From Thecamonas trahens ATCC 50062 (Eukaryota; Protista; Apusomonadida): 64,000 nucleotides of DNA. Of the stretch, positions 512 through 57,524 are shown piece by piece. The first letter of the stretch is position 1; each line of letters starts with the position of its first letter. Made by a program: the position numbers and the translations under genes. The notes below the pieces were generated by a model that was not told the origin of the DNA, did not search any database, and was given only the letters and a program-made list of their open reading frames with translations. The stretch is taken from positions 247,324 to 311,323 of the forward strand of contig NW_013657646.1 of NCBI RefSeq assembly GCF_000142905.1, in the 5' to 3' direction.

Positions 512-936
512 CTTCCCAGCCTCCTTTCCACCCCCCCCCCCCCCCCCGGAAATAATCTAAACTTTCCGTCCTTGAACTTGGGGCGTGGGGAGTCATTATC
601 TGAATGTTCTACCGGAGGCACCCGAATCGGCGGCGACGCGCCAGATCCTGAATTGGAGCTGGTATGCGCGTGCATCGAGGAGAACCAANNNNNNNNNNNN
701 NNNNNNNNNNNNNNNNNNNNNNNNNNNNNNNNNNNNNNNNNNNNNNNNNNNNNNNNNNNNNNNNNNNNNNNNNNNNNNNNNNNNNNNNGGACCGTCGGAG
801 GTACGCCCCCTCCCTCCCCCCTCCCCTCTCTCTCTCTCCCCCCTCCCTCCCTCCCCCCTGCCTGTCCACTGCCTTAGTTGCAACCGCCCTCACCCCCCCC
901 CTCCCCCCTCCCCCAAACCCACACGCACACAGGAAG

Positions 937-1365
937 ATGACCATGCTCGGAGTGTTCCAGCGAGTGGAGGCGAGGCTCACCCGTGAGCTGACCGAGGAGG
1001 AGAAGGCGTCGGTGCGAACTGTGGTTGACGCTGCCGTCTTTGCTGCCCTGGTCAAGAGCGAGGGTCTCGACGATGGCGACGATGCCATGCGCGGCCGCGC
1101 ACGCCTCTCCGAGCACGGTGTGTGCGAGGTCGTCATGAGCATCCGCACAGAACTGCTCAAGGCAGATACCACAGCTGATCGCCAGATCGAGCTCATCCGC
1201 GCCCTCGCCCGCGAGCACATCACCTTTAACGTGCTCAAGAAGACAAAGGTCGGCAAGACGCTCAACAAGCTCCGCAAGTCGTCCGACTCGCGCGTCGCAC
1301 GCATGGCCAAGGAGCTGATCCTGGTCCTCAAGCGCCTCGTTGCCGACCGCTCATCCTCCAGCTGA
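937..1365 (+). CDS. Small protein with a TFIIS N-terminal (TND/Med26/IWS1-type) helical domain; 5' end uncertain
   Basis: ITFNVLKKTKVGKTLNKLRKS..VARMAKELI matches the TND consensus (L..T.IG..V..LRK...V...AK.L). Preceded by a C-rich tract ending CACAG (possible acceptor) and an N gap. Confidence 0.7.
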   Translation: MTMLGVFQRVEARLTRELTEEEKASVRTVVDAAVFAALVKSEGLDDGDDAMRGRARLSEHGVCEVVMSIRTELLKADTTADRQIELIRALAREHITFNVLKKTKVGKTLNKLRKSSDSRVARMAKELILVLKRLVADRSSSS

Positions 1366-1410: not shown

Positions 1411-1542
1411 TGAGCTTAGCCATGGCCTGCCCATCACCCTAATTACACCCCCCAACCCCCTCCTCGTCCCCCATCAATTTTTACCAAACCACCCCCCCCC
1501 CCACCCCCCATGCACCAGGTGCAACCACCCGTCTCTCCCGCC

Positions 1543-2250
1543 ATGGCTGCTGTAACGGAAGACTCGGCCACGCCAGGCCTTCCCCCGGTCCGCTTTGGCG
1601 ACATGACCGAGGACGAGACCGCCGCCCGCATCAAAATGCTGCTGGAGACCGAGGGTGAGGCCAGGCCGTACCTCCACGACGCCTTCCCGGCCTCCAACGT
1701 CCTCGTCGAGGGCTCGCCCATGCCCGACCTGTCGCTCCTGCGTCTCGATGGCTCGCCCGCCGCCCTCGGTGCCGACATCATCATCCCGGCGCTGGACAGC
1801 TCGCACGCCACAGGCGTTGTCATCCTCAACTTTGGCTCGTGGACCTGACCACCCTTCCGCCGCAACATCCGCTCGGTCACCGAGCTGGCTGCTGCGGCGG
1901 AGACGCCGCTGTTCAACGTCTACATCCGCGAGGCCCACGCCGAGGACGACTGGGCCATCGAGGTCAACACCGACGATGACGTCTGCTTCCCGCAGCCCAA
2001 ATCGACCGCAGCCCGGCTTGCTGTTGCCAACGACTTTGTTGCCACCGCCTCCCTCGATCCGGCTGCCATCCTCGTCGATCCCATCGAGAACGAGGCCGAG
2101 GCCGCCTTTGAGGCCCGCCCCGAGCGCCTCTATGCCATCGCCCGCGTCAGTGGCGTCCTCACCGTTGTCTTCCGCACTGGAATCGGGCCATATATGTACT
2201 CGGTTACCAAGCTCAAAGCCTTCCTCGACTCCTGTCGAGCGCCGCACTGA
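1543..2250 (+). CDS. Iodothyronine deiodinase-family selenoprotein, 235 aa, Sec at in-frame UGA 1846-1848
   Basis: Reading through TGA gives VILNFGSWT-U-PPFRR ... FNVYIREAHAEDDW ... FPQPKSTAARL ... ILVDPIENEAEAAFEARPERLYAI ... GIGPYMY. These are the deiodinase motifs FGSxT(U/C)PPF, YIxEAH, VDxxxN, PERL, GxGP. Frame stays open for a further 133 codons after the UGA. Confidence 0.93.
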
Positions 2251-2338
2251 GTTTGCCTGTTGGCCCTGTGTGCGCACGGTCGCCGCGCCGCTCCGTGCCC
2301 TGCCGCTGTTCCGCGCAATCTTCCGATGGTTGAATGCC

Positions 2339-2392
2339 ATGACTTGACGCCTCCTCATCCGCACTCATTCGTGCGGCGGTGGCGACAACGAG
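2339..2392 (+). promoter_or_regulatory. Candidate type-II SECIS element in the deiodinase 3' UTR
   Basis: Core ATGAC (2339-43) opposite CGAG (2389-92). 11-bp helix II TTGACGCCTCC/GGTGGCGACAA (9 WC pairs). Apical bulge TCAT. Perfect 6-bp mini-stem CCGCAC/GTGCGG. Located 89 nt after the stop. Confidence 0.75.
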
Positions 2393-2476
2393 CCTGAGCG
2401 CAAGCCCTGTGGGGCCTTGCCTTCCTCCCTTTTCACACCATCGTCATCAAACTGCGTTAGTACAGCGTTCAATATC

Positions 2477-5400
2477 TCATCTACCTCCGTACGTCGGCGG
2501 TGGCACTGTCGGGCTACTCACCACCGCTTCGTACGATGGCGGCATGATCGCCGTGTTAAATGCCGAGCCTGGCGGGCCAAAGTAAGCTGCCGGACACGAC
2601 GGCGGGAGCGGCGAGCTGCCGGGCACAGGCGGCATGACGCCGGCAGGCGTAAACGGCGGCGGTGGCGGCATACCGGCGCCACTACCCATCGGCGGCAGCG
2701 GAATGCCTTCGTCCACCCCAGGCGGCGGCCGCGGCTGCCGCGCCTGATGCACGCCCCGCCGCCGCGCCATCTGCTGCCGCTTGGTCACCACCATGATGAT
2801 CACCAGCAACAGCAGTGTGCCCGCCAGCCCACCGGCAATAGCCACCACTGGAGTCGTCGAGCTGCTCGAGCCCGACGAGCTCCGCGATGACGCCCCGGCC
2901 GTCGTCGACGAGCTGGATGTGGAGTTGATGCCGCTGATCCTGCACGTCGAGGAACATGCCGCTGTCGAGTCGCACTCTTCGCCGGCAGCCGAGTTGACAT
3001 ACCCATCGCCACACACAGCAAACGTGCAGTCTGGATCACACTGCGATGTCGCCACACGGCCGGTATCGCAGTCCTCGCCCGGTGCAACCACACCATCGCC
3101 ACACACCACGTTGATGCTCTTGCACGTCGGCGAGCAGAACAGGCTCGACGTCACCGCAGTGTCACACTCTTCGCCTGCCGCCGCATTCACCATGCCATCG
3201 CCGCACGACGGCGCCGTGCAGTCAGCATCACAGCTCACGGTGTGGACGCCGCCTTCGTCGCACACCTCGGACCGCACTCCGGTCGCCCTCACATTCGACA
3301 GCCCAATTGTGTCGCAGCTGGAGCACGATTGCTTGGTCTGCAAAAAGACGAGAAAGAGAGGCGCTGGCGTCCCCGTCGACCATCCAGAAAACTGCGTGAG
3401 CGAGACCACTGCCGACTTCCACGACGTAGACGACCGCGAAATGGTCACCGTCCCGCCAATCTGCGACGAGCTGCTCATCTGTGCAGACGAGAACAACTGG
3501 ACCACGAGCAGCTCACCAGAGTCGACGGTCTCGCACGGCGTAGAGCTGGCTGGATACCTCACGTCAAATGTGACTTCCTGCGTACCGGGCGGTAGGAGCG
3601 TTACCAGCCGGCGCTTGCCCGACGAGGGCGTTCCAGTGAACAGCACTGTCTCCCCTGCCTTTGCCGAGCTGCCCACAAGGCATGACGGGAGCGTAGCGGG
3701 GTAAAACTGGACACCGATCGCGTCCGCTACCGCGCTTGTCGATGACAGCGGAATCCGGAGGTCGAACTGGTGCGAAGAGCTCTCCACTCGCCCGTTACCA
3801 CATCGCGGCGCCCTGCAGCTGTTGCTGCACCCGTCGCTGTCGATGGCGTTGCCGTCATCGCACTCCTCCGGCGAGGTCACCACGCCGTCGCCGCACACCG
3901 GCAGCGTGCATGAGCTAGTGCACGGGGCCGAGTTAGGCGCCGACGCGTCGCACGGCTCGATGCCCTGGTGAACAAATCCGTCGCCGCATGACGCCGGCCG
4001 GCAGTTAACGCAGCTGTCCGTGTTGATAGTGTTGCCATCGTCGCACACCTCGCCGGTCGAGTACGGATTGACTAGGCCGTCGCCACAGACTGGAAACGTG
4101 CAGTCGACATCGCAGTATCCGGTGGCCGCTCCGCCCGAGTCGCACTCTTCCACCCCGTTGACAACAAAGTCACCGCACCGCGGGAGAAGGCAGCTCGAGC
4201 ACCCATCCGCCGGATTGGTGTTGCCGTCATCACACTCGCGCAGCAGCATGGCTCGGACCTCGACATCGTCCACAAAGGTGGTCGGGTCCGCGCCGCCGAC
4301 ACTGTCCGCCGACCGATAGAGCTTGATCTGGACGCCGATGCGCCGCGCCCGGTCGTCGAGCGAGTATCCGGTCATCCCCACCGCCTGCGGCGTGACATAG
4401 ACCACAGTCTCAGCGAACGACGTCGCGCTCGACAGGAGCGGCGAGACAGCGGCCACCTCGACATATGACGAGAGCAGAGCCCCGGTAGTCGTGTCGACAG
4501 TCCGTGCGGCAACATGCAGAAGCTGGCTCGTCGTGTTGCTCACCACCACGCCACATCTCGCGTCCGACGCAGCCTCGGCGCTTCGCGCCACGCCGCTCGT
4601 CCACGTTGTGAAAGACATGCCGGCAAAGCCGGTAACAGGCTTGAGCTCCAGCTCGCGCTGGCCGTTGCTCGAAAGAAGAACCGCCGTTGACGGGTCGCTC
4701 GCCGGCGTGCAGCCCGACTGGACCACCGCGTTGCTCAGCGGCGTGGTGTACCGATTAAACCACTCGGAAGTGGTCGAGAAGCTATCGAAAAAGCCGCCGT
4801 GTGCTGCCCGCGAGGTAAAGACGGGCGACGCCGCCGACCCGTCACCGCACTCTTCCCAGGTGCAGCTCGCTGAGCACCCGTCGCCATCAACGGCGTTCCC
4901 GTCGTCGCACTCTTCGCCAGCACCCGGGTTGATCACTCCGTCACCACAGCCACCATGGACCGTGCAGTTTGGTGTACAGGTTGTAGAGCCAAGCGGTGAG
5001 CCCGAGTCGCAAGCTTCAGACCCCGTCACCATGCCGTCGCCGCAGTACGCATACCGACAGTTGGGCATGCACTCTATGCTTCCGTCGTCGCACTCTTCGC
5101 CAGCCGCTACGTTGCGGATACCATCGCCGCAGACAGGGGCCGTGCAGTCGACGTTGCAACTCGCGCTCTCGCCTGCCGTGTCGCAGGCCTCGACACCTAT
5201 CCAAACCAAGCCGTCGCCACACCTGGCTGGAGCGCACAACACGCACGAGTCGTTCGTGAACGCATTGCCGTCGTCGCACACCTCGGCGCTCAAAGACGTC
5301 ACAATGTTGACGCCAACCAGCGCCGAAACGTCATAGCTTGAACCCGAGTGCACCGGCTGAGAGAAAATGAGCTCAAACGGCGCGTCGGTCGGCTTCCGGT

Positions 5401-6547
5401 TCTGCATGCTGGCAGGAATGGCGAGCTGGTGTGTGCCAAGTGAGCCACTGTGGCGCGGCAGGATCTCGGTGTGCTCGACGGAAGCGCCGCGGATCTTGAA
5501 TGTGGCATGAAGATCCTCTCCCGAGTCGACTTTCTCGCAGCTCCCGACTCCGGACCCGTACTCGTAAGTCACCTCGATGCCCCCAATTCGGGTGGTCAGG
5601 GTGTCGATGGTTAGGGTGGCCGTGCGATCGCTCGTGCCGTCAAACGTGATAGACTCTTGAGCACACGTACTGGAGATTCGCGCTCCGGTTCCCAGCGTCC
5701 ACTCGGGGCCGAGGCCGTGGGTGGCAAATGTCCACTCGTAAGTGGCGGTCGAGACGTTGCCGTTCACCACGCCGTCACCGCAGTATGGCGTGATGCGGCA
5801 CTCGACGCAGCCGTCGACGCTAGTTGCGTCCGGCGTCCCGTCGTCGCACTCTTCCGGCTCGGCCGGGCCGCCGTAGATGGCGACGTCGTCCAGAACCATG
5901 TGGTCAAAGCTGGAGCCAGACGAGGAGGCCTGGTTGAACCGCAGATGGATGATCTTGCCCTGCACATCGGCAGGGATGTCAATCGAGTGCGAAGACCACG
6001 TCGAGTGGGTCGTCGGCACAGCGGCAAGTATAGTCCACGTCGTGCCGGACGCTACCTTGTACTCGAGGGTCAGATCCTCGCCGTTGTCCGGGTTCTCGCA
6101 ACTGCCGGACGACGAGGTCATAAAGACGTCAAAGCTGACGCGAGTCACCTTCTCCAACGTTCCAACCAGTTGCAGCGTCCGAACCGAGTCGCCTTGGAAG
6201 CGGGCCGCCCACGATCCGCGGGCGGCGCACGTGCCGACGTTGCCAATGATGGCTACGCCTGTGGCCTGCCAAGCCGCGGAAATGGTGCCGGACTCAAAGT
6301 CATCACTGAAGATCAGCCGATTGCCAGACAGGTTGCTGACGTTGTATGCGTTGAGAATGCCATCGCCACAGTACTCACGGACACACACGGCCGAGCATCC
6401 ATCATACGAATCATTGTTGCCATCGTCGCACTCTTCGCCACTCTCCACCACCGCGTTGCCGCACGAGGCGCCCAACGCCTGCCGGCTGCAGAGGGTCACC
6501 ACAGCGAGAGCAGTCAGGACCACCACAAGCACGGGCGCACGCACCAT
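2477..6547 (-). CDS. Type I membrane protein: Myxococcus-type Cys-rich repeats (DUF4215-like) plus four reelin-like beta-sandwich inserts, TM helix, PPxY tail
   Basis: Signal peptide MVRAPVLVVVLTALAVVTLC. Many CGDG..EECDDGN..DGC repeats. TM VVAIAGGLAGTLLLLVIIMVV. Pro-rich cytosolic tail with PPSY and PPTY. Confidence 0.85.
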   Translation of the reverse strand: MVRAPVLVVVLTALAVVTLCSRQALGASCGNAVVESGEECDDGNNDSYDGCSAVCVREYCGDGILNAYNVSNLSGNRLIFSDDFESGTISAAWQATGVAIIGNVGTCAARGSWAARFQGDSVRTLQLVGTLEKVTRVSFDVFMTSSSGSCENPDNGEDLTLEYKVASGTTWTILAAVPTTHSTWSSHSIDIPADVQGKIIHLRFNQASSSGSSFDHMVLDDVAIYGGPAEPEECDDGTPDATSVDGCVECRITPYCGDGVVNGNVSTATYEWTFATHGLGPEWTLGTGARISSTCAQESITFDGTSDRTATLTIDTLTTRIGGIEVTYEYGSGVGSCEKVDSGEDLHATFKIRGASVEHTEILPRHSGSLGTHQLAIPASMQNRKPTDAPFELIFSQPVHSGSSYDVSALVGVNIVTSLSAEVCDDGNAFTNDSCVLCAPARCGDGLVWIGVEACDTAGESASCNVDCTAPVCGDGIRNVAAGEECDDGSIECMPNCRYAYCGDGMVTGSEACDSGSPLGSTTCTPNCTVHGGCGDGVINPGAGEECDDGNAVDGDGCSASCTWEECGDGSAASPVFTSRAAHGGFFDSFSTTSEWFNRYTTPLSNAVVQSGCTPASDPSTAVLLSSNGQRELELKPVTGFAGMSFTTWTSGVARSAEAASDARCGVVVSNTTSQLLHVAARTVDTTTGALLSSYVEVAAVSPLLSSATSFAETVVYVTPQAVGMTGYSLDDRARRIGVQIKLYRSADSVGGADPTTFVDDVEVRAMLLRECDDGNTNPADGCSSCLLPRCGDFVVNGVEECDSGGAATGYCDVDCTFPVCGDGLVNPYSTGEVCDDGNTINTDSCVNCRPASCGDGFVHQGIEPCDASAPNSAPCTSSCTLPVCGDGVVTSPEECDDGNAIDSDGCSNSCRAPRCGNGRVESSSHQFDLRIPLSSTSAVADAIGVQFYPATLPSCLVGSSAKAGETVLFTGTPSSGKRRLVTLLPPGTQEVTFDVRYPASSTPCETVDSGELLVVQLFSSAQMSSSSQIGGTVTISRSSTSWKSAVVSLTQFSGWSTGTPAPLFLVFLQTKQSCSSCDTIGLSNVRATGVRSEVCDEGGVHTVSCDADCTAPSCGDGMVNAAAGEECDTAVTSSLFCSPTCKSINVVCGDGVVAPGEDCDTGRVATSQCDPDCTFAVCGDGYVNSAAGEECDSTAACSSTCRISGINSTSSSSTTAGASSRSSSGSSSSTTPVVAIAGGLAGTLLLLVIIMVVTKRQQMARRRGVHQARQPRPPPGVDEGIPLPPMGSGAGMPPPPPFTPAGVMPPVPGSSPLPPSCPAAYFGPPGSAFNTAIMPPSYEAVVSSPTVPPPTYGGR

Positions 6548-6588
6548 AGCAAGCAAGGAACAAGAATGAAGTGTGAAGGGTGGAGAAA

Positions 6589-55802: not shown

Positions 55803-57524
55803 GTGGGTGACATTGGGCTCGGCTGTCTCTGGCTTCCGCTTGTTAGCATAAGCTTGCAAGGCTATTCAGGGCTTCGGATCAATGTGCCCAAGCAGCTGGG
55901 CCTCACTGCGCCAAATGCGAGGACATACACGGAGGAGTCGCCTTCTTGGAGGACTGGGGTGGAGCTGTGCGCCACGCTCAAGGTGGCGCCGGTCCCGTTT
56001 CCGCATCGAAACGTGGTTGCGGTGCTTGCGGGCGAGGCGTACGCCATGCCGTGGGGCATCTCCATCTCGGTCCAGGCCAAGTCGAACGCGGCGCATCAGG
56101 CGGTGATGATGCCGGTGTCTACAGCGTCGAACTCGCTGGTGTGGAGCTACTCGCGTGAGGCGCAGGTGCTCTTCTACCACATGCTGAGGTCGTTCCCGCG
56201 GCTGGTGTCGGTCATCCAAGCCGGGGTGTATGTGCCTGAGAGCGCGGCGGTGGCCATTGCCAACACCAACCAGTACGTGTACGGCTTGAGCCAGGGTGAG
56301 GCGCAGGCCATTTCGGCGTGGCTCTCGGACGTGGCCGGCCTCGAGCCGATGTCTCTGCCGGACGCGGTCGTCGACATGTGCCTGAGCCACTGCTCCTCGC
56401 TCGGCACTCTGGTCCCGCCGCTCACGCCGGACATGATGGACCACGACGCCAACGTCTTGCTCGACGAGCTGGCTGCCGAGGGCCTCACCCTGCCGTATCA
56501 GTCGTTCTCGCCGGTCTCGTCGCCGATTTTCGAGTCGCTGCCGTCTCTGACGCCGACGTCTGCGTCTGCATCGTCGCCCGAGGACGCACGGATGCGTGAG
56601 TTGTTTTCCGCGTTTTCCAACTCGTCGCCGACCTCGTCGTCGTGCGAGGTCTCGCCGCGGTCACCGTCGCTGCATGGTAGCGGCCATGGGGCGAGCCACA
56701 GCGGCGCGAGCTCTACGTCAACGTCGGCCCGCGACTCGCCGCTCATCGTCCCGTCGCTGACCAACCATCCAGCGGGCCTCGCCGCCATCCCCATTCCGGT
56801 CTCAGCCCGGGTCTCGTCGCCGCGGTCGGTTTCGCCGCGGTCGCCACGGAGCACCGGCTCGCCGCGGGTCCCGGACCGGCGCCAGAGTCTGTCCAAGGCG
56901 ACGCGCGGGCTGAAGATTTCCCGTTCGCCGCGGTCACCACGGTCGCCGCGGTCGCCGCGGTCGCCTGCATCGCCTGTATCGCCGGCGGGCACCGGATCTG
57001 CGGGGCGGGCGGCACCTCCGGCGGCGTCGCGCTCGGCGAAGGCGGTCTCGACCGACCGCACGCTTGTGAAGAGCCCAAATGCCATTGTGGGCGCGTACTG
57101 CAAGCACGCCCGCTTTGCTTGTATTAACGACGTGGTCCTTGCGCTCCTCGAGGAGTTTATGCTCACCTCGCCCAAGTCGAGCAAGTCGGGTGGCAAGGCT
57201 GCCCGCAACGGGCCCAAGCGCGCGGCCATCGGGCTCCGCGAGGTGCTCAAGCAGTCGCAGCGGTCGGCGGTCGCCGTCGTCCTCTTTGCGGCCGACATCG
57301 AGGGCGCAGTCCGCGACAAGCTTGGCAAGCTCATCGGCTCGATTACCGAAGCATGCGCCGAGTCGGGCACGCTGGTTGTCTTTGCGCTCACGCGCGACGA
57401 GCTCTCGCGGGCGCTCGGCAAGACGGGAAACATCTCATGTGTCGGCCTGCTGCACACGGCAGTGACTGCCGTCGACCTCGGCCCACTCCGTGCTCTCATG
57501 GCCGAGGCGTATGCGCAGGCTTGA
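55803..57524 (+). CDS. Divergent SECIS-binding protein 2 (SBP2)-like L7Ae protein; main exon, upstream exons unresolved
   Basis: AYCKH..INDVVLALLEE ... KRAAIGLREVLK..VVLFAADIE ... LVVFALTRDELSRALGK..ISCVGLL parallels SBP2 YC....V..LL.EL...RRLVLGLREVLKH...PFVFALNRKALGRSLNK...VSVVGI. CAG acceptor at 55803. Confidence 0.72.
   Translation: MGDIGLGCLWLPLVSISLQGYSGLRINVPKQLGLTAPNARTYTEESPSWRTGVELCATLKVAPVPFPHRNVVAVLAGEAYAMPWGISISVQAKSNAAHQAVMMPVSTASNSLVWSYSREAQVLFYHMLRSFPRLVSVIQAGVYVPESAAVAIANTNQYVYGLSQGEAQAISAWLSDVAGLEPMSLPDAVVDMCLSHCSSLGTLVPPLTPDMMDHDANVLLDELAAEGLTLPYQSFSPVSSPIFESLPSLTPTSASASSPEDARMRELFSAFSNSSPTSSSCEVSPRSPSLHGSGHGASHSGASSTSTSARDSPLIVPSLTNHPAGLAAIPIPVSARVSSPRSVSPRSPRSTGSPRVPDRRQSLSKATRGLKISRSPRSPRSPRSPRSPASPVSPAGTGSAGRAAPPAASRSAKAVSTDRTLVKSPNAIVGAYCKHARFACINDVVLALLEEFMLTSPKSSKSGGKAARNGPKRAAIGLREVLKQSQRSAVAVVLFAADIEGAVRDKLGKLIGSITEACAESGTLVVFALTRDELSRALGKTGNISCVGLLHTAVTAVDLGPLRALMAEAYAQA

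What the first reader, a model, noticed from the sequence alone, without database searches (positions are those of the whole stretch)
1543..2250. Hidden selenoprotein: soluble iodothyronine-deiodinase homolog recoded at UGA
Seen: ORF 1510..1848 stops at TGA exactly in LNFGSWT*PPF, and the same frame continues 133 codons with YIREAH, VDPIEN, PERLY and GIGPY. Known: vertebrate DIO1-3 have Sec in FGS(C/A)T-U-P(S/P)F. Inference: this is a Sec102 enzyme that standard gene callers truncate or mis-splice. It has no N-terminal TM anchor and has Trp two residues before Sec (Cys in DIO1/3, Ala in DIO2). In a unicellular host with no thyroid, it may act on other haloaromatics.
Basis: partly seen in the sequence, partly recalled or inferred. 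Interest (0 to 1): 0.88.

Follow-up and report, generated by a model that had tools for sequence, protein, structure and literature searches.

The report
Deiodinase-like selenoprotein gene, mis-annotated
This is a real gene for a soluble selenium-containing enzyme of the thyroid-hormone-deiodinase family in a marine single-celled eukaryote; its UGA "stop" encodes selenocysteine, the public gene model wrongly cuts the active site out, and enzymes of this kind are already known from amoebae and marine bacteria.

Summary
ORF 1510..1848 ends at TGA 1846-1848 inside LNFGSWT*PPF, and the frame stays open to 2250.

- The Pfam T4_deiodinase match runs across the TGA (64.8 bits).
- Relatives carry Cys at that position.
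- Two paralogs in the genome have TGA at the same site.
- Its closest full-length relative is a polyadenylated eukaryotic mRNA with TGA there.
- The genome has tRNA-Sec, SepSecS, SelD/SPS and eEFSec, plus a weak SBP2-like ORF. PSTK was not found.
- A type-II SECIS-like element lies at 2328-2406. It has the AUGA..CGAG core but UCAU where AA is usual.
- Contigs from two environmental metagenomes keep the TGA.

The public 213-aa gene model removes 1819-1884, which holds the active site, as a false intron.

The protein has 235 residues with Sec102 and no membrane anchor. It keeps the deiodinase proton-relay residues but lacks Dio3 His219, Arg275 and Cys239, so its substrate is probably not a thyronine.

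One feature is unexplained: a very stable hairpin (1855-1902) starts 6 nt after the UGA.

Deiodinase-like selenoproteins are known in Dictyostelium and in marine bacteria, so this is a new member of a known kind. The scan had also noted this stretch, its SECIS and a paralog elsewhere.

The parts
1543..2250 (+). Coding sequence of the deiodinase-like selenoprotein. It encodes 235 residues with Sec102, has no intron, and ends at TGA 2248-2250. An upstream in-frame ATG at 1510 is a less likely start.
   Evidence: PF00837 match across the TGA, 64.8 bits. GC3 is 0.85 and 0.80 on the two sides of the TGA. The public model and the X5 contig both begin at 1542/1543.
1846..1848 (+). In-frame UGA read as selenocysteine (Sec102) in the motif G-S-W-T-U-P-P-F.
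   Evidence: This position aligns with Cys in 11 of the 18 relatives that carry the motif, and with TGA in the mRNA contigs L022-L024. Paralogs L001 and L003 have TGA at the same site. The TGA is unchanged in contigs of X2, X6 and X5.
1855..1902 (+). A 48-nt hairpin of about 20 base pairs inside the coding sequence, starting 6 nt after the UGA. It is a candidate SRE-like recoding stimulator whose function is not shown.
   Evidence: Free energy -33.6 kcal/mol, z = -5.5, and 0 of 200 dinucleotide shuffles fold as well. None of 1000 synonymous recodings is as stable, and only 0.5% of coding 60-mers from this window reach this value. It is not present in the paralogs, in the homologous mRNA, or in 5 other selenoprotein genes.
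1819..1884 (+). A 66-nt stretch that the public gene model removes as an intron. It is a gene-caller artefact and is really coding, encoding VILNFGSWT-U-PPFRRNIRSVTE.
   Evidence: P0001 compared with the window translation. It starts GTCATC and ends CCGAG, whereas the two inferred real introns start GTAAG or GTACG and end ACAG. It encodes the most conserved motif of the family. The X5 contig is colinear across it.
2328..2406 (+). Type-II SECIS-like element in the 3'UTR. Helix I is 2328-2337 paired with 2397-2406. The core is AUGA 2339-2342 and CGAG 2389-2392. Helix II is 2344-2354 paired with 2378-2388. The apical internal loop is UCAU 2355-2358, with no AA. The mini-stem is 2359-2364 paired with 2371-2376.
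   Evidence: Script scan and fold. Both paralogs have the same architecture 36-40 nt after their stop codons, with UCAA or CCAA in the apical loop. The best candidates downstream of 5 other TGA-containing selenoprotein genes share NUGA-C...CGA(G/C). At the same score threshold there are only 2 other sites in the 128 kb of both strands. The environmental contigs do not differ in this element. Weak points: folding z is only -0.84 and the Rfam SECIS_1 model gives no hit.

Best explanation
Window 1543-2250 is an intact, intron-less nuclear gene of a marine unicellular eukaryote. It encodes a 235-residue soluble selenoprotein of the iodothyronine-deiodinase family (thioredoxin fold with the deiodinase-specific loop-D insertion). 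UGA 1846-1848 is decoded as selenocysteine (Sec102). Decoding is directed by a type-II SECIS in the 3'UTR (2328-2406), using the genome's tRNA-Sec, SepSecS, SPS, eEFSec and an SBP2-like protein. The unusually stable hairpin 6 nt after the UGA may help recoding; this is inferred.

For catalysis (inferred), the Sec102 selenolate sits in the conserved hydrogen-bond network Ser99/Thr101/Tyr127/Glu130/His132 and attacks an electrophilic atom of the substrate. My committed reading is reductive dehalogenation of a small haloaromatic that is not a thyronine (about 0.4). The alternative is a peroxiredoxin-like thiol/selenol oxidoreductase or peroxidase role (about 0.35). The oxidised selenium would then be reduced by a thiol, possibly Cys148 in loop D or an external thiol, since the vertebrate resolving cysteines are absent.

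Shown here: the gene, the family, the Sec/Cys pair, the machinery and the mis-annotation. Inferred: SECIS function, the hairpin's role, the substrate and the resolving thiol.
For: Sequence and frame: with coding periodicity on both sides of the TGA. PF00837 scores 50.7 bits for the C piece and 64.8 bits across the TGA. The only significant PDB sequence matches of the C piece are Dio3 4tr3 (E 9e-9) and Dio2 9h48 (E 5e-7), with Y-I-x-E-A-H, D-x-W and P-E-R-L-Y aligned.

Sec/Cys pair: among the top 150 cluster representatives, 18 contain the active-site motif, with C in 11, W in 4, S in 2 and A in 1. The other 132 are C-terminal fragments of about 128 aa that begin about 18 residues before YIxEAH, which is what truncation at a UGA would give. 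The 'W' of the closest full-length relative, P0004, is a TGA codon. It sits in polyadenylated mRNA contigs from three samples whose 3'UTR has a SECIS-like element.

Two paralogs have TGA at the same site and SECIS-like elements. Machinery: tRNA-Sec at 74.4 bits with anticodon TCA, SepSecS (19), SelD (20), eEFSec with PF21208 at 124.5 bits (56), and an SBP2-like ORF (51, 78). Other genes with an in-frame TGA exist in GPx and Rdx families. The TGA is unchanged in environmental contigs. An AlphaFold model of P0004 matches Dio2 and Dio3 best, with TM 0.78-0.79 normalised to the target.
Against: There is no RNA read evidence from this organism that is known to be RNA; the library kind of run X5 is not recorded. 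The SECIS lacks the usual unpaired AA (it has UCAU), folds no better than shuffles (z -0.84), and is not recognised by Rfam SECIS_1, although that model finds nothing anywhere in this genome. PSTK was not found. The SBP2-like ORF is below the Pfam cut-off, at 16.2 against 22.1 bits. The N piece alone matches nothing. Residues equivalent to Dio3 His219, Arg275 and Cys239 are Pro152, Ile214 and Ala174, so deiodinase chemistry on thyronines is unlikely and the substrate is unknown. The hairpin is not conserved in any relative tested.
Confidence: 0.88

Rival explanations
1. The UGA is a true stop. The gene would be a recently inactivated pseudogene, or would encode only the 101-residue N-terminal fragment, because its SECIS has lost the apical AA.
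For: The apical loop is UCAU where the paralogs have UCAA or CCAA. The SECIS fold has z -0.84. There is no Rfam hit.
Against: The frame stays open for 133 codons after the TGA, with GC3 0.80 and a 50.7-bit family match. All three paralogs and a distant mRNA homolog have TGA at the same site, so the TGA is ancestral and not a new lesion. Environmental contigs are identical over the coding sequence and the SECIS. Candidate SECIS elements of other selenoprotein genes here also depart from the canon, with CUGA and UUGA cores and a CUAC loop.
Confidence: 0.05
2. The public model is right: 1819-1884 is a real 66-nt intron that removes the UGA, giving a 213-residue protein with neither Sec nor Cys.
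For: The stretch starts with GT, ends with AG and is a multiple of three. The database protein P0001 has this form.
Against: Splicing would delete the most conserved motif of the family and the catalytic residue. The stretch has coding periodicity and is part of the HMM match. The splice sites GTCATC and CCGAG differ from the two inferred real introns, which start GTAAG or GTACG and end ACAG (only two examples). The X5 contig of the same organism is colinear over 1542-2297. The homologous mRNA is colinear with its TGA.
Confidence: 0.04
3. The UGA is read through as another amino acid (Trp or Cys by a near-cognate tRNA, or a variant genetic code), not as Sec.
For: Four database relatives show W at the site.
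Against: At least one of those W residues is simply a TGA translated with another code table by the gene caller. This gene itself ends at a TGA (2248-2250), as do other genes here, so TGA is a normal stop. A full Sec pathway and SECIS-like elements are present.
Confidence: 0.02

Closest known systems
Dictyostelium discoideum deiodinase-like selenoprotein (Lobanov et al. 2007, PMC2375036)
   Same: A Sec-containing homolog of thyroid-hormone deiodinase in a unicellular eukaryote that has no thyroid hormones, with a type-II SECIS in the 3'UTR.
   Different: The Dictyostelium SECIS has an unpaired AAA and a UGUA before the core, whereas this one has UCAU and AUGAC...CGAG. This genome has three paralogs. 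The direct sequence relationship to the Dictyostelium protein was not tested here.
Bacterial deiodinase-like proteins of marine metagenomes (Zhang et al. 2005, PMC1088965)
   Same: Soluble members of PF00837 that occur in both Sec and Cys forms and are thought to have a redox function other than thyroid-hormone deiodination. They share the GSYT(C/U)PPFR consensus seen in the relatives found here.
   Different: Bacterial genes use a SECIS hairpin directly after the UGA. This gene lies among eukaryotic genes and has a eukaryote-type 3'UTR SECIS. Its post-UGA hairpin has a UCA loop with no G, so it does not look like a bacterial SECIS.
Vertebrate DIO1-3 (structures: Dio3 4TR3, Dio2 9H48)
   Same: Shared features are the G-S-x-T-U-P-P-F active site, Tyr/Glu/His of Y-I-x-E-A-H, Trp of D-x-W, Glu of (F/P)-E-R-L-Y and the loop-D insertion. 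The model of the nearest full-length relative superposes best on Dio2 and Dio3.
   Different: There is no N-terminal membrane anchor. The Dio3 His219, Arg275, Cys239 and Cys168 equivalents are Pro152, Ile214, Ala174 and Trp100. Sequence identity is about 30%.
Selenocysteine redefinition element (SRE) of SELENON/SELENOT mRNAs (reviewed in PMC8704476)
   Same: A stable stem-loop a few nucleotides downstream of a UGA-Sec codon, separated from it by a short spacer.
   Different: Known SREs were defined by phylogenetic conservation and mutagenesis in vertebrates. This hairpin is not conserved in paralogs or homologs and is untested.

Membership tests
Iodothyronine deiodinase family (Pfam PF00837 T4_deiodinase) | Profile match above the curated cut-off (27 bits) | tested here: met
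   The C piece scores 50.7 bits. The read-through six-frame match scores 64.8 bits over model positions 75-234.
Iodothyronine deiodinase family (Pfam PF00837 T4_deiodinase) | Catalytic Sec (or Cys) in G-S-x-T-[U/C]-P-P-F at the beta1-alpha1 junction | tested here: met
   The window has GSWT-TGA-PPF. Cys sits at the aligned column in 11 relatives.
Iodothyronine deiodinase family (Pfam PF00837 T4_deiodinase) | Deiodinase-specific insertion (loop D) with the conserved edges Y-I-x-E-A-H and D-x-W | tested here: met
   Y127, E130, H132 and W137 align to Dio3 Y197, E200, H202 and W207. The roles of these residues are taken from PMC11592359.
Iodothyronine deiodinase family (Pfam PF00837 T4_deiodinase) | Thioredoxin fold closest to the solved Dio catalytic cores | tested here: inconclusive
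   This was tested only on the nearest full-length relative, P0004 (about 41% identical to the window's two pieces). Its model has pLDDT 83.6 and its top hits are 9h48 and 4tr3. The window's own read-through protein could not be handed to the fold tool.
Vertebrate-type iodothyronine deiodinase (DIO1-3) in the narrow sense | N-terminal transmembrane anchor | tested here: not met
   The maximum 19-residue Kyte-Doolittle mean is 1.39, and it lies near the C-terminus.
Vertebrate-type iodothyronine deiodinase (DIO1-3) in the narrow sense | Thyronine-site and relay residues Dio3 His219 and Arg275, and the resolving Cys239 | tested here: not met
   These positions are Pro152, Ile214 and Ala174 in the alignment to 4tr3.
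Vertebrate-type iodothyronine deiodinase (DIO1-3) in the narrow sense | Reductive deiodination of iodothyronines | not testable with these tools
   This needs an enzyme assay.
Eukaryotic selenoprotein gene | In-frame UGA aligned with Cys in homologs, with coding sequence continuing downstream | tested here: met
Eukaryotic selenoprotein gene | SECIS in the 3'UTR: AUGA/GA quartet, helix II of about 9-12 positions, helix I | tested here: met
   The element spans 2328-2406. The same architecture is found in both paralogs and in 5 other selenoprotein genes. About 2 other sites occur per 128 kb at the same score, though that pattern was partly derived from these elements.
Eukaryotic selenoprotein gene | Unpaired AA in the SECIS apical loop or bulge | tested here: not met
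   The loop is UCAU at 2355-2358, and there is no AA in the terminal loop UCAUUC either.
Eukaryotic selenoprotein gene | Sec machinery in the genome | tested here: met
   tRNA-Sec, SepSecS (19), SelD (20) and eEFSec (56) are present. The SBP2-like ORF is weak. PSTK was not found.
Eukaryotic selenoprotein gene | Selenium actually incorporated | not testable with these tools
   This needs 75Se labelling or mass spectrometry.
Selenocysteine redefinition element (SRE) | Stable stem-loop a few nucleotides 3' of the UGA-Sec codon | tested here: met
   A 6-nt spacer, -33.6 kcal/mol and z -5.5. It is more stable than all 1000 synonymous recodings.
Selenocysteine redefinition element (SRE) | Phylogenetic conservation of the structure | tested here: not met
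   There is no comparable hairpin in L001, L003, L022 or 5 other selenoprotein genes.

The most novel reading that the evidence does not exclude
The gene works with a SECIS that lacks the apical AA because a coding-region hairpin 6 nt after the UGA acts as a redefinition element. That would be the first such element outside animals. The enzyme would be a soluble selenium-dependent dehalogenase for non-thyronine haloaromatics that uses the loop-D Cys148 as its resolving thiol.
Probability: 0.12. Interest if true: 0.6.

Novelty: new member of a known kind. Interest (0 to 1): 0.4.

Why it matters
The practical value is annotation. The public protein for this gene lacks its catalytic centre, and most database relatives (132 of the top 150 cluster representatives) look like fragments cut at the Sec codon. 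This family is therefore systematically mis-called in microbial eukaryotes and in metagenomes.

Biologically, it adds a three-gene deiodinase-like set to a marine protist that has a sizeable selenoproteome. It also gives a soluble, small, intron-less member that would be easy to express as a Cys mutant. That could address the long-open question of what deiodinase-like enzymes do in organisms without thyroid hormone.

The SECIS without AA and the post-UGA hairpin are testable oddities of Sec recoding.

Tried and rejected
- Rfam SECIS models: no hit in the region, the paralog loci or the whole genome. Because the genome clearly uses Sec, this blank reflects on the model and not on the gene.
- MAFFT alignments of the three SECIS candidates were mis-registered.
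- A covariance model built from the L003 element alone found the L001 and window elements only weakly (13.3 and 9.9 bits). It aligned the window element in a UUGA register that leaves helix II too short. I therefore did not build a second model or scan the genome with it, and no formal covariation count was made.
- My generic SECIS-shape scanner is unspecific in this GC-rich DNA, giving about 1 hit per 3 kb. Only the stricter AUGAC..CGAS pattern is informative, and it was partly derived from the same elements.
- The N piece alone gave no Pfam or meaningful PDB match.
- PSTK: the KTI12-family hit is a single locus that is probably KTI12 itself, and TIGR03575 found nothing.
- The top hit of the bacterial selB model was an EF-Tu. 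The real eEFSec was the second hit.
- The metatranscriptome run X13 covered only the neighbouring gene's 3' end identically, so no RNA evidence was obtained for this gene itself.
- A post-UGA hairpin as a general feature of this genome's selenoprotein genes is rejected.
- The pieces were searched apart, and read-through translation was done only inside scripts with the stop shown as '*'.

Full report
**Observation.** The window reads as described. An ORF from ATG 1510 (a second ATG at 1543 has a GCCATGG context) ends at TGA 1846-1848 inside VVILNFGSWT*PPFRRN. The same frame then continues for 133 codons to TGA 2248-2250 and contains YIREAH, VDPIEN, PERLY and GIGPY. Third-position GC is 0.85 before and 0.80 after the TGA in this frame, against 0.47-0.68 in the other frames. 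The 3'UTR has no such periodicity. So the sequence after the TGA looks coding.

**Family.** The C-terminal piece alone matches Pfam T4_deiodinase (PF00837) at 50.7 bits, with a cut-off of 27. A six-frame search of the organism's own genome gives a single match of 64.8 bits over model positions 75-234. That match runs from window 1708 to 2229 with one TGA inside, so the match crosses the stop. The N piece alone is too short to score. Against solved structures, the only significant matches of the C piece are mouse Dio3 (4tr3, E 9e-9) and Dio2 (9h48, E 5e-7).

**Sec or stop?** Five lines of evidence agree.

1. An exhaustive HMMER search with the C piece found 497 cluster representatives. Of the best 150, 18 contain the active-site motif, with Cys (11), Trp (4), Ser (2) or Ala (1) at the aligned position. 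The other 132 are fragments of about 128 residues that start about 18 residues before YIxEAH, the pattern expected when gene callers stop at a Sec codon.
2. P0004, the closest full-length relative (about 41% identical to the window's two pieces), shows 'W' at the site. That W is a TGA codon in polyadenylated mRNA contigs from three metatranscriptome samples, and the 3'UTR holds a type-II SECIS-like element. A eukaryotic homolog is therefore transcribed colinearly with its UGA.
3. The genome (28.7 Mb, 131 contigs) has two more T4_deiodinase loci, each with one TGA at the same site: AGSRS*PPSRR and AGSYS*PPIRG.
4. The Sec pathway is present:
   - tRNA-Sec scores 74.4 bits and has anticodon TCA.
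   - SepSecS scores 285 + 131 bits.
   - SelD/SPS scores 192.8 bits.
   - eEFSec carries the eukaryotic domain III, PF21208, at 124.5 bits.
   - An ORF in this same window (55803-57524) has as its best PDB match the L7Ae domain of human SBP2 (E 0.0015), although it is below the Pfam cut-off.
   - PSTK was not found.
   - GPx- and Rdx-family genes with in-frame TGA also exist.
5. Contigs from two environmental metagenomes (X2 over 1681-2207, X6 over 1791-1978) and from another run of the same organism (X5 over 1542-2297) are identical to the window across the TGA, with no gap. The library kind of X5 is not recorded, so I do not count it as RNA. The one RNA run that was laid covered only the neighbouring gene.

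**SECIS.** Rfam's SECIS_1 model finds nothing here and also nothing in the whole genome. That blank is therefore uninformative.

A script, and inspection by eye, find a type-II element at 2328-2406:
- helix I
- AUGA (2339-2342) followed by C
- an 11-position helix II (2344-2354 paired with 2378-2388: 9 pairs with A.A and U.U mismatches)
- an internal loop UCAU (2355-2358)
- a 6-bp mini-stem
- CGAG (2389-2392)

Both paralogs carry the same architecture 36-40 nt after their stop codons, with UCAA or CCAA in the loop. Their helix II sequences differ but still pair. The best candidates downstream of five other TGA-containing genes share NUGA-C...CGA(G/C). With that stricter pattern and a helix score of at least 8, both strands of the window (128 kb) hold only two other sites, though the pattern was partly learned from these same elements.

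The weak points are the missing apical AA and a fold no better than shuffles (z -0.84, against -2.8 and -3.4 for the paralogs). Environmental contigs show no difference within the element. They differ from the window at 2254 (X6 only) and share an extra G after 2410.

**A hairpin after the UGA.** Six nucleotides after the UGA, a stem-loop of about 20 bp spans 1855-1902.
- Its free energy is -33.6 kcal/mol, with z -5.5, and 0 of 200 shuffles fold as well.
- None of 1000 synonymous recodings of the same peptide is as stable (their mean is -18.8, sd 4.0).
- Only 0.5% of coding 60-mers from this window reach this value.

It resembles the redefinition elements described next to some animal UGA-Sec codons. 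However, it is absent from the paralogs, from the homologous mRNA and from five other selenoprotein genes of this genome. I report it as an unexplained, possibly stimulatory structure. That it occurs in the one gene whose SECIS lacks AA is a single coincidence and not evidence.

**Mis-annotation.** The database protein that matches this locus (P0001, 213 aa, 98% identical) starts at 1543 and lacks VILNFGSWT*PPFRRNIRSVTE, so 1819-1884 was removed as a 66-nt GT..AG intron. That stretch encodes the family's most conserved motif. Its ends are GTCATC and CCGAG, while two introns inferred from exon breaks elsewhere in the genome start GTAAG or GTACG and end ACAG. I take it as an artefact made to avoid the stop.

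**The protein.** With Met1 at 1543 the protein has 235 residues and Sec102. It has no hydrophobic segment that could span a membrane.

| Status | This protein | Dio3 equivalent |
|---|---|---|
| Conserved | Ser99 | Ser167 |
| Conserved | Thr101 | Thr169 |
| Conserved | Tyr127 | Tyr197 |
| Conserved | Glu130 | Glu200 |
| Conserved | His132 | His202 |
| Conserved | Trp137 | Trp207 |
| Conserved | Glu194 | Glu259 |
| Not conserved | Trp100 | Cys168 |
| Not conserved | Pro152 | His219 |
| Not conserved | Ala174 | Cys239 |
| Not conserved | Ile214 | Arg275 |

The conserved residues make up most of the proposed proton relay and the edges of loop D. The microbial relatives also lack His219 (consensus Q-P-x-T) and vary at the Arg275 position. 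The position two before Sec is usually Tyr in the family, so the Trp here is a small variation.

A Cys in loop D (Cys148, in V-C-F-P-Q-P) is shared by the window and 4 of the 15 full-length relatives in the alignment. It could be a resolving thiol, but this is an inference and no distance was measured.

An AlphaFold model of P0004 (pLDDT 83.6, core above 90) matches Dio2 and Dio3 best. E-values are 7.5e-14 and 3e-13 with TM 0.78-0.79 normalised to the target, ahead of ResA/TlpA- and Prx-type thioredoxin folds at 4.5e-9 or weaker.

**Mechanism.** Shown here: a Sec-encoding gene of the deiodinase family with recoding signals and machinery. Inferred: a selenolate nucleophile in the conserved hydrogen-bond network. 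My committed reading is reductive dehalogenation of a non-thyronine haloaromatic (about 0.4). A peroxiredoxin-like redox or peroxidase role is nearly as likely (about 0.35). This matches what was already suggested for the bacterial family.

**Comparison and novelty.** A Sec-containing deiodinase homolog in a thyroid-less protist was reported for Dictyostelium in 2007, with a type-II SECIS. Sec and Cys deiodinase-like proteins of marine bacteria were reported in 2005. This gene is therefore a new member of a known kind.

Earlier notes of this scan had flagged the same stretch, its SECIS, a paralog and other selenoproteins of this genome. I found the SECIS independently and checked the SBP2-like ORF and the paralogs myself.

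**Rules.** The read-through protein was never submitted to a search or fold tool as one sequence.

Noticed in passing
window 55803-57524 (+): A 573-aa ORF whose C-terminal part is L7Ae-like. Pfam gives 16.2 bits, below the 22.1 cut-off. Its best PDB match is the RNA-binding domain of human SBP2, residues 632-750 (E 0.0015). It is probably the organism's SECIS-binding protein.
   Followed up: partly
L001 (G000:C45) 1045-2076 and L003 (G000:C10) 796-1977: Two further deiodinase-like selenoprotein genes with TGA at the same site (AGSRS*PPS, AGSYS*PPI). They have N-terminal extensions of about 170 and 250 residues, and type-II SECIS elements with UCAA or CCAA 36-40 nt after the stop.
   Followed up: partly
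L010, L011, L014 (GPx); L016, L017 (Rdx/SelW-like); G000:C41:31645-31782: Other genes of this genome have an in-frame TGA at the redox site. Their best SECIS candidates share NUGA-C...CGA(G/C), and some have CUGA or UUGA cores. The Rfam SECIS_1 model detects none of them.
   Followed up: partly
L025 (Logan transcriptome contig), protein P0002: This polyadenylated mRNA is a close relative with the same N-terminal helix and the loop-D Cys, but with Ser at the Sec position (GSYT-S-PTY). It may be a natural catalytically altered form.
   Followed up: no
window 664-1365 (+): The upstream neighbour has a TFIIS/Med26 helical-bundle domain (PF08711, 44 bits). A run of N in the assembly interrupts its 5' part.
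   Followed up: no
window 2477-6556 (-): The convergent neighbour is a 1359-aa ORF with many CxxCGDG...ECDDGN cysteine-rich repeats and a C-terminal membrane segment. Its stop lies 71 nt from the end of the SECIS. Metatranscriptome contig X13 matches its 3' end (2455-2658) exactly.
   Followed up: no
window 2254 and 2410: Environmental contigs differ from the assembly only in the 3'UTR outside the SECIS: T>C at 2254 in X6, and an extra G after 2410 in both X2 and X6. The organism, or a very close strain, occurs in estuarine and marine metagenomes.
   Followed up: no
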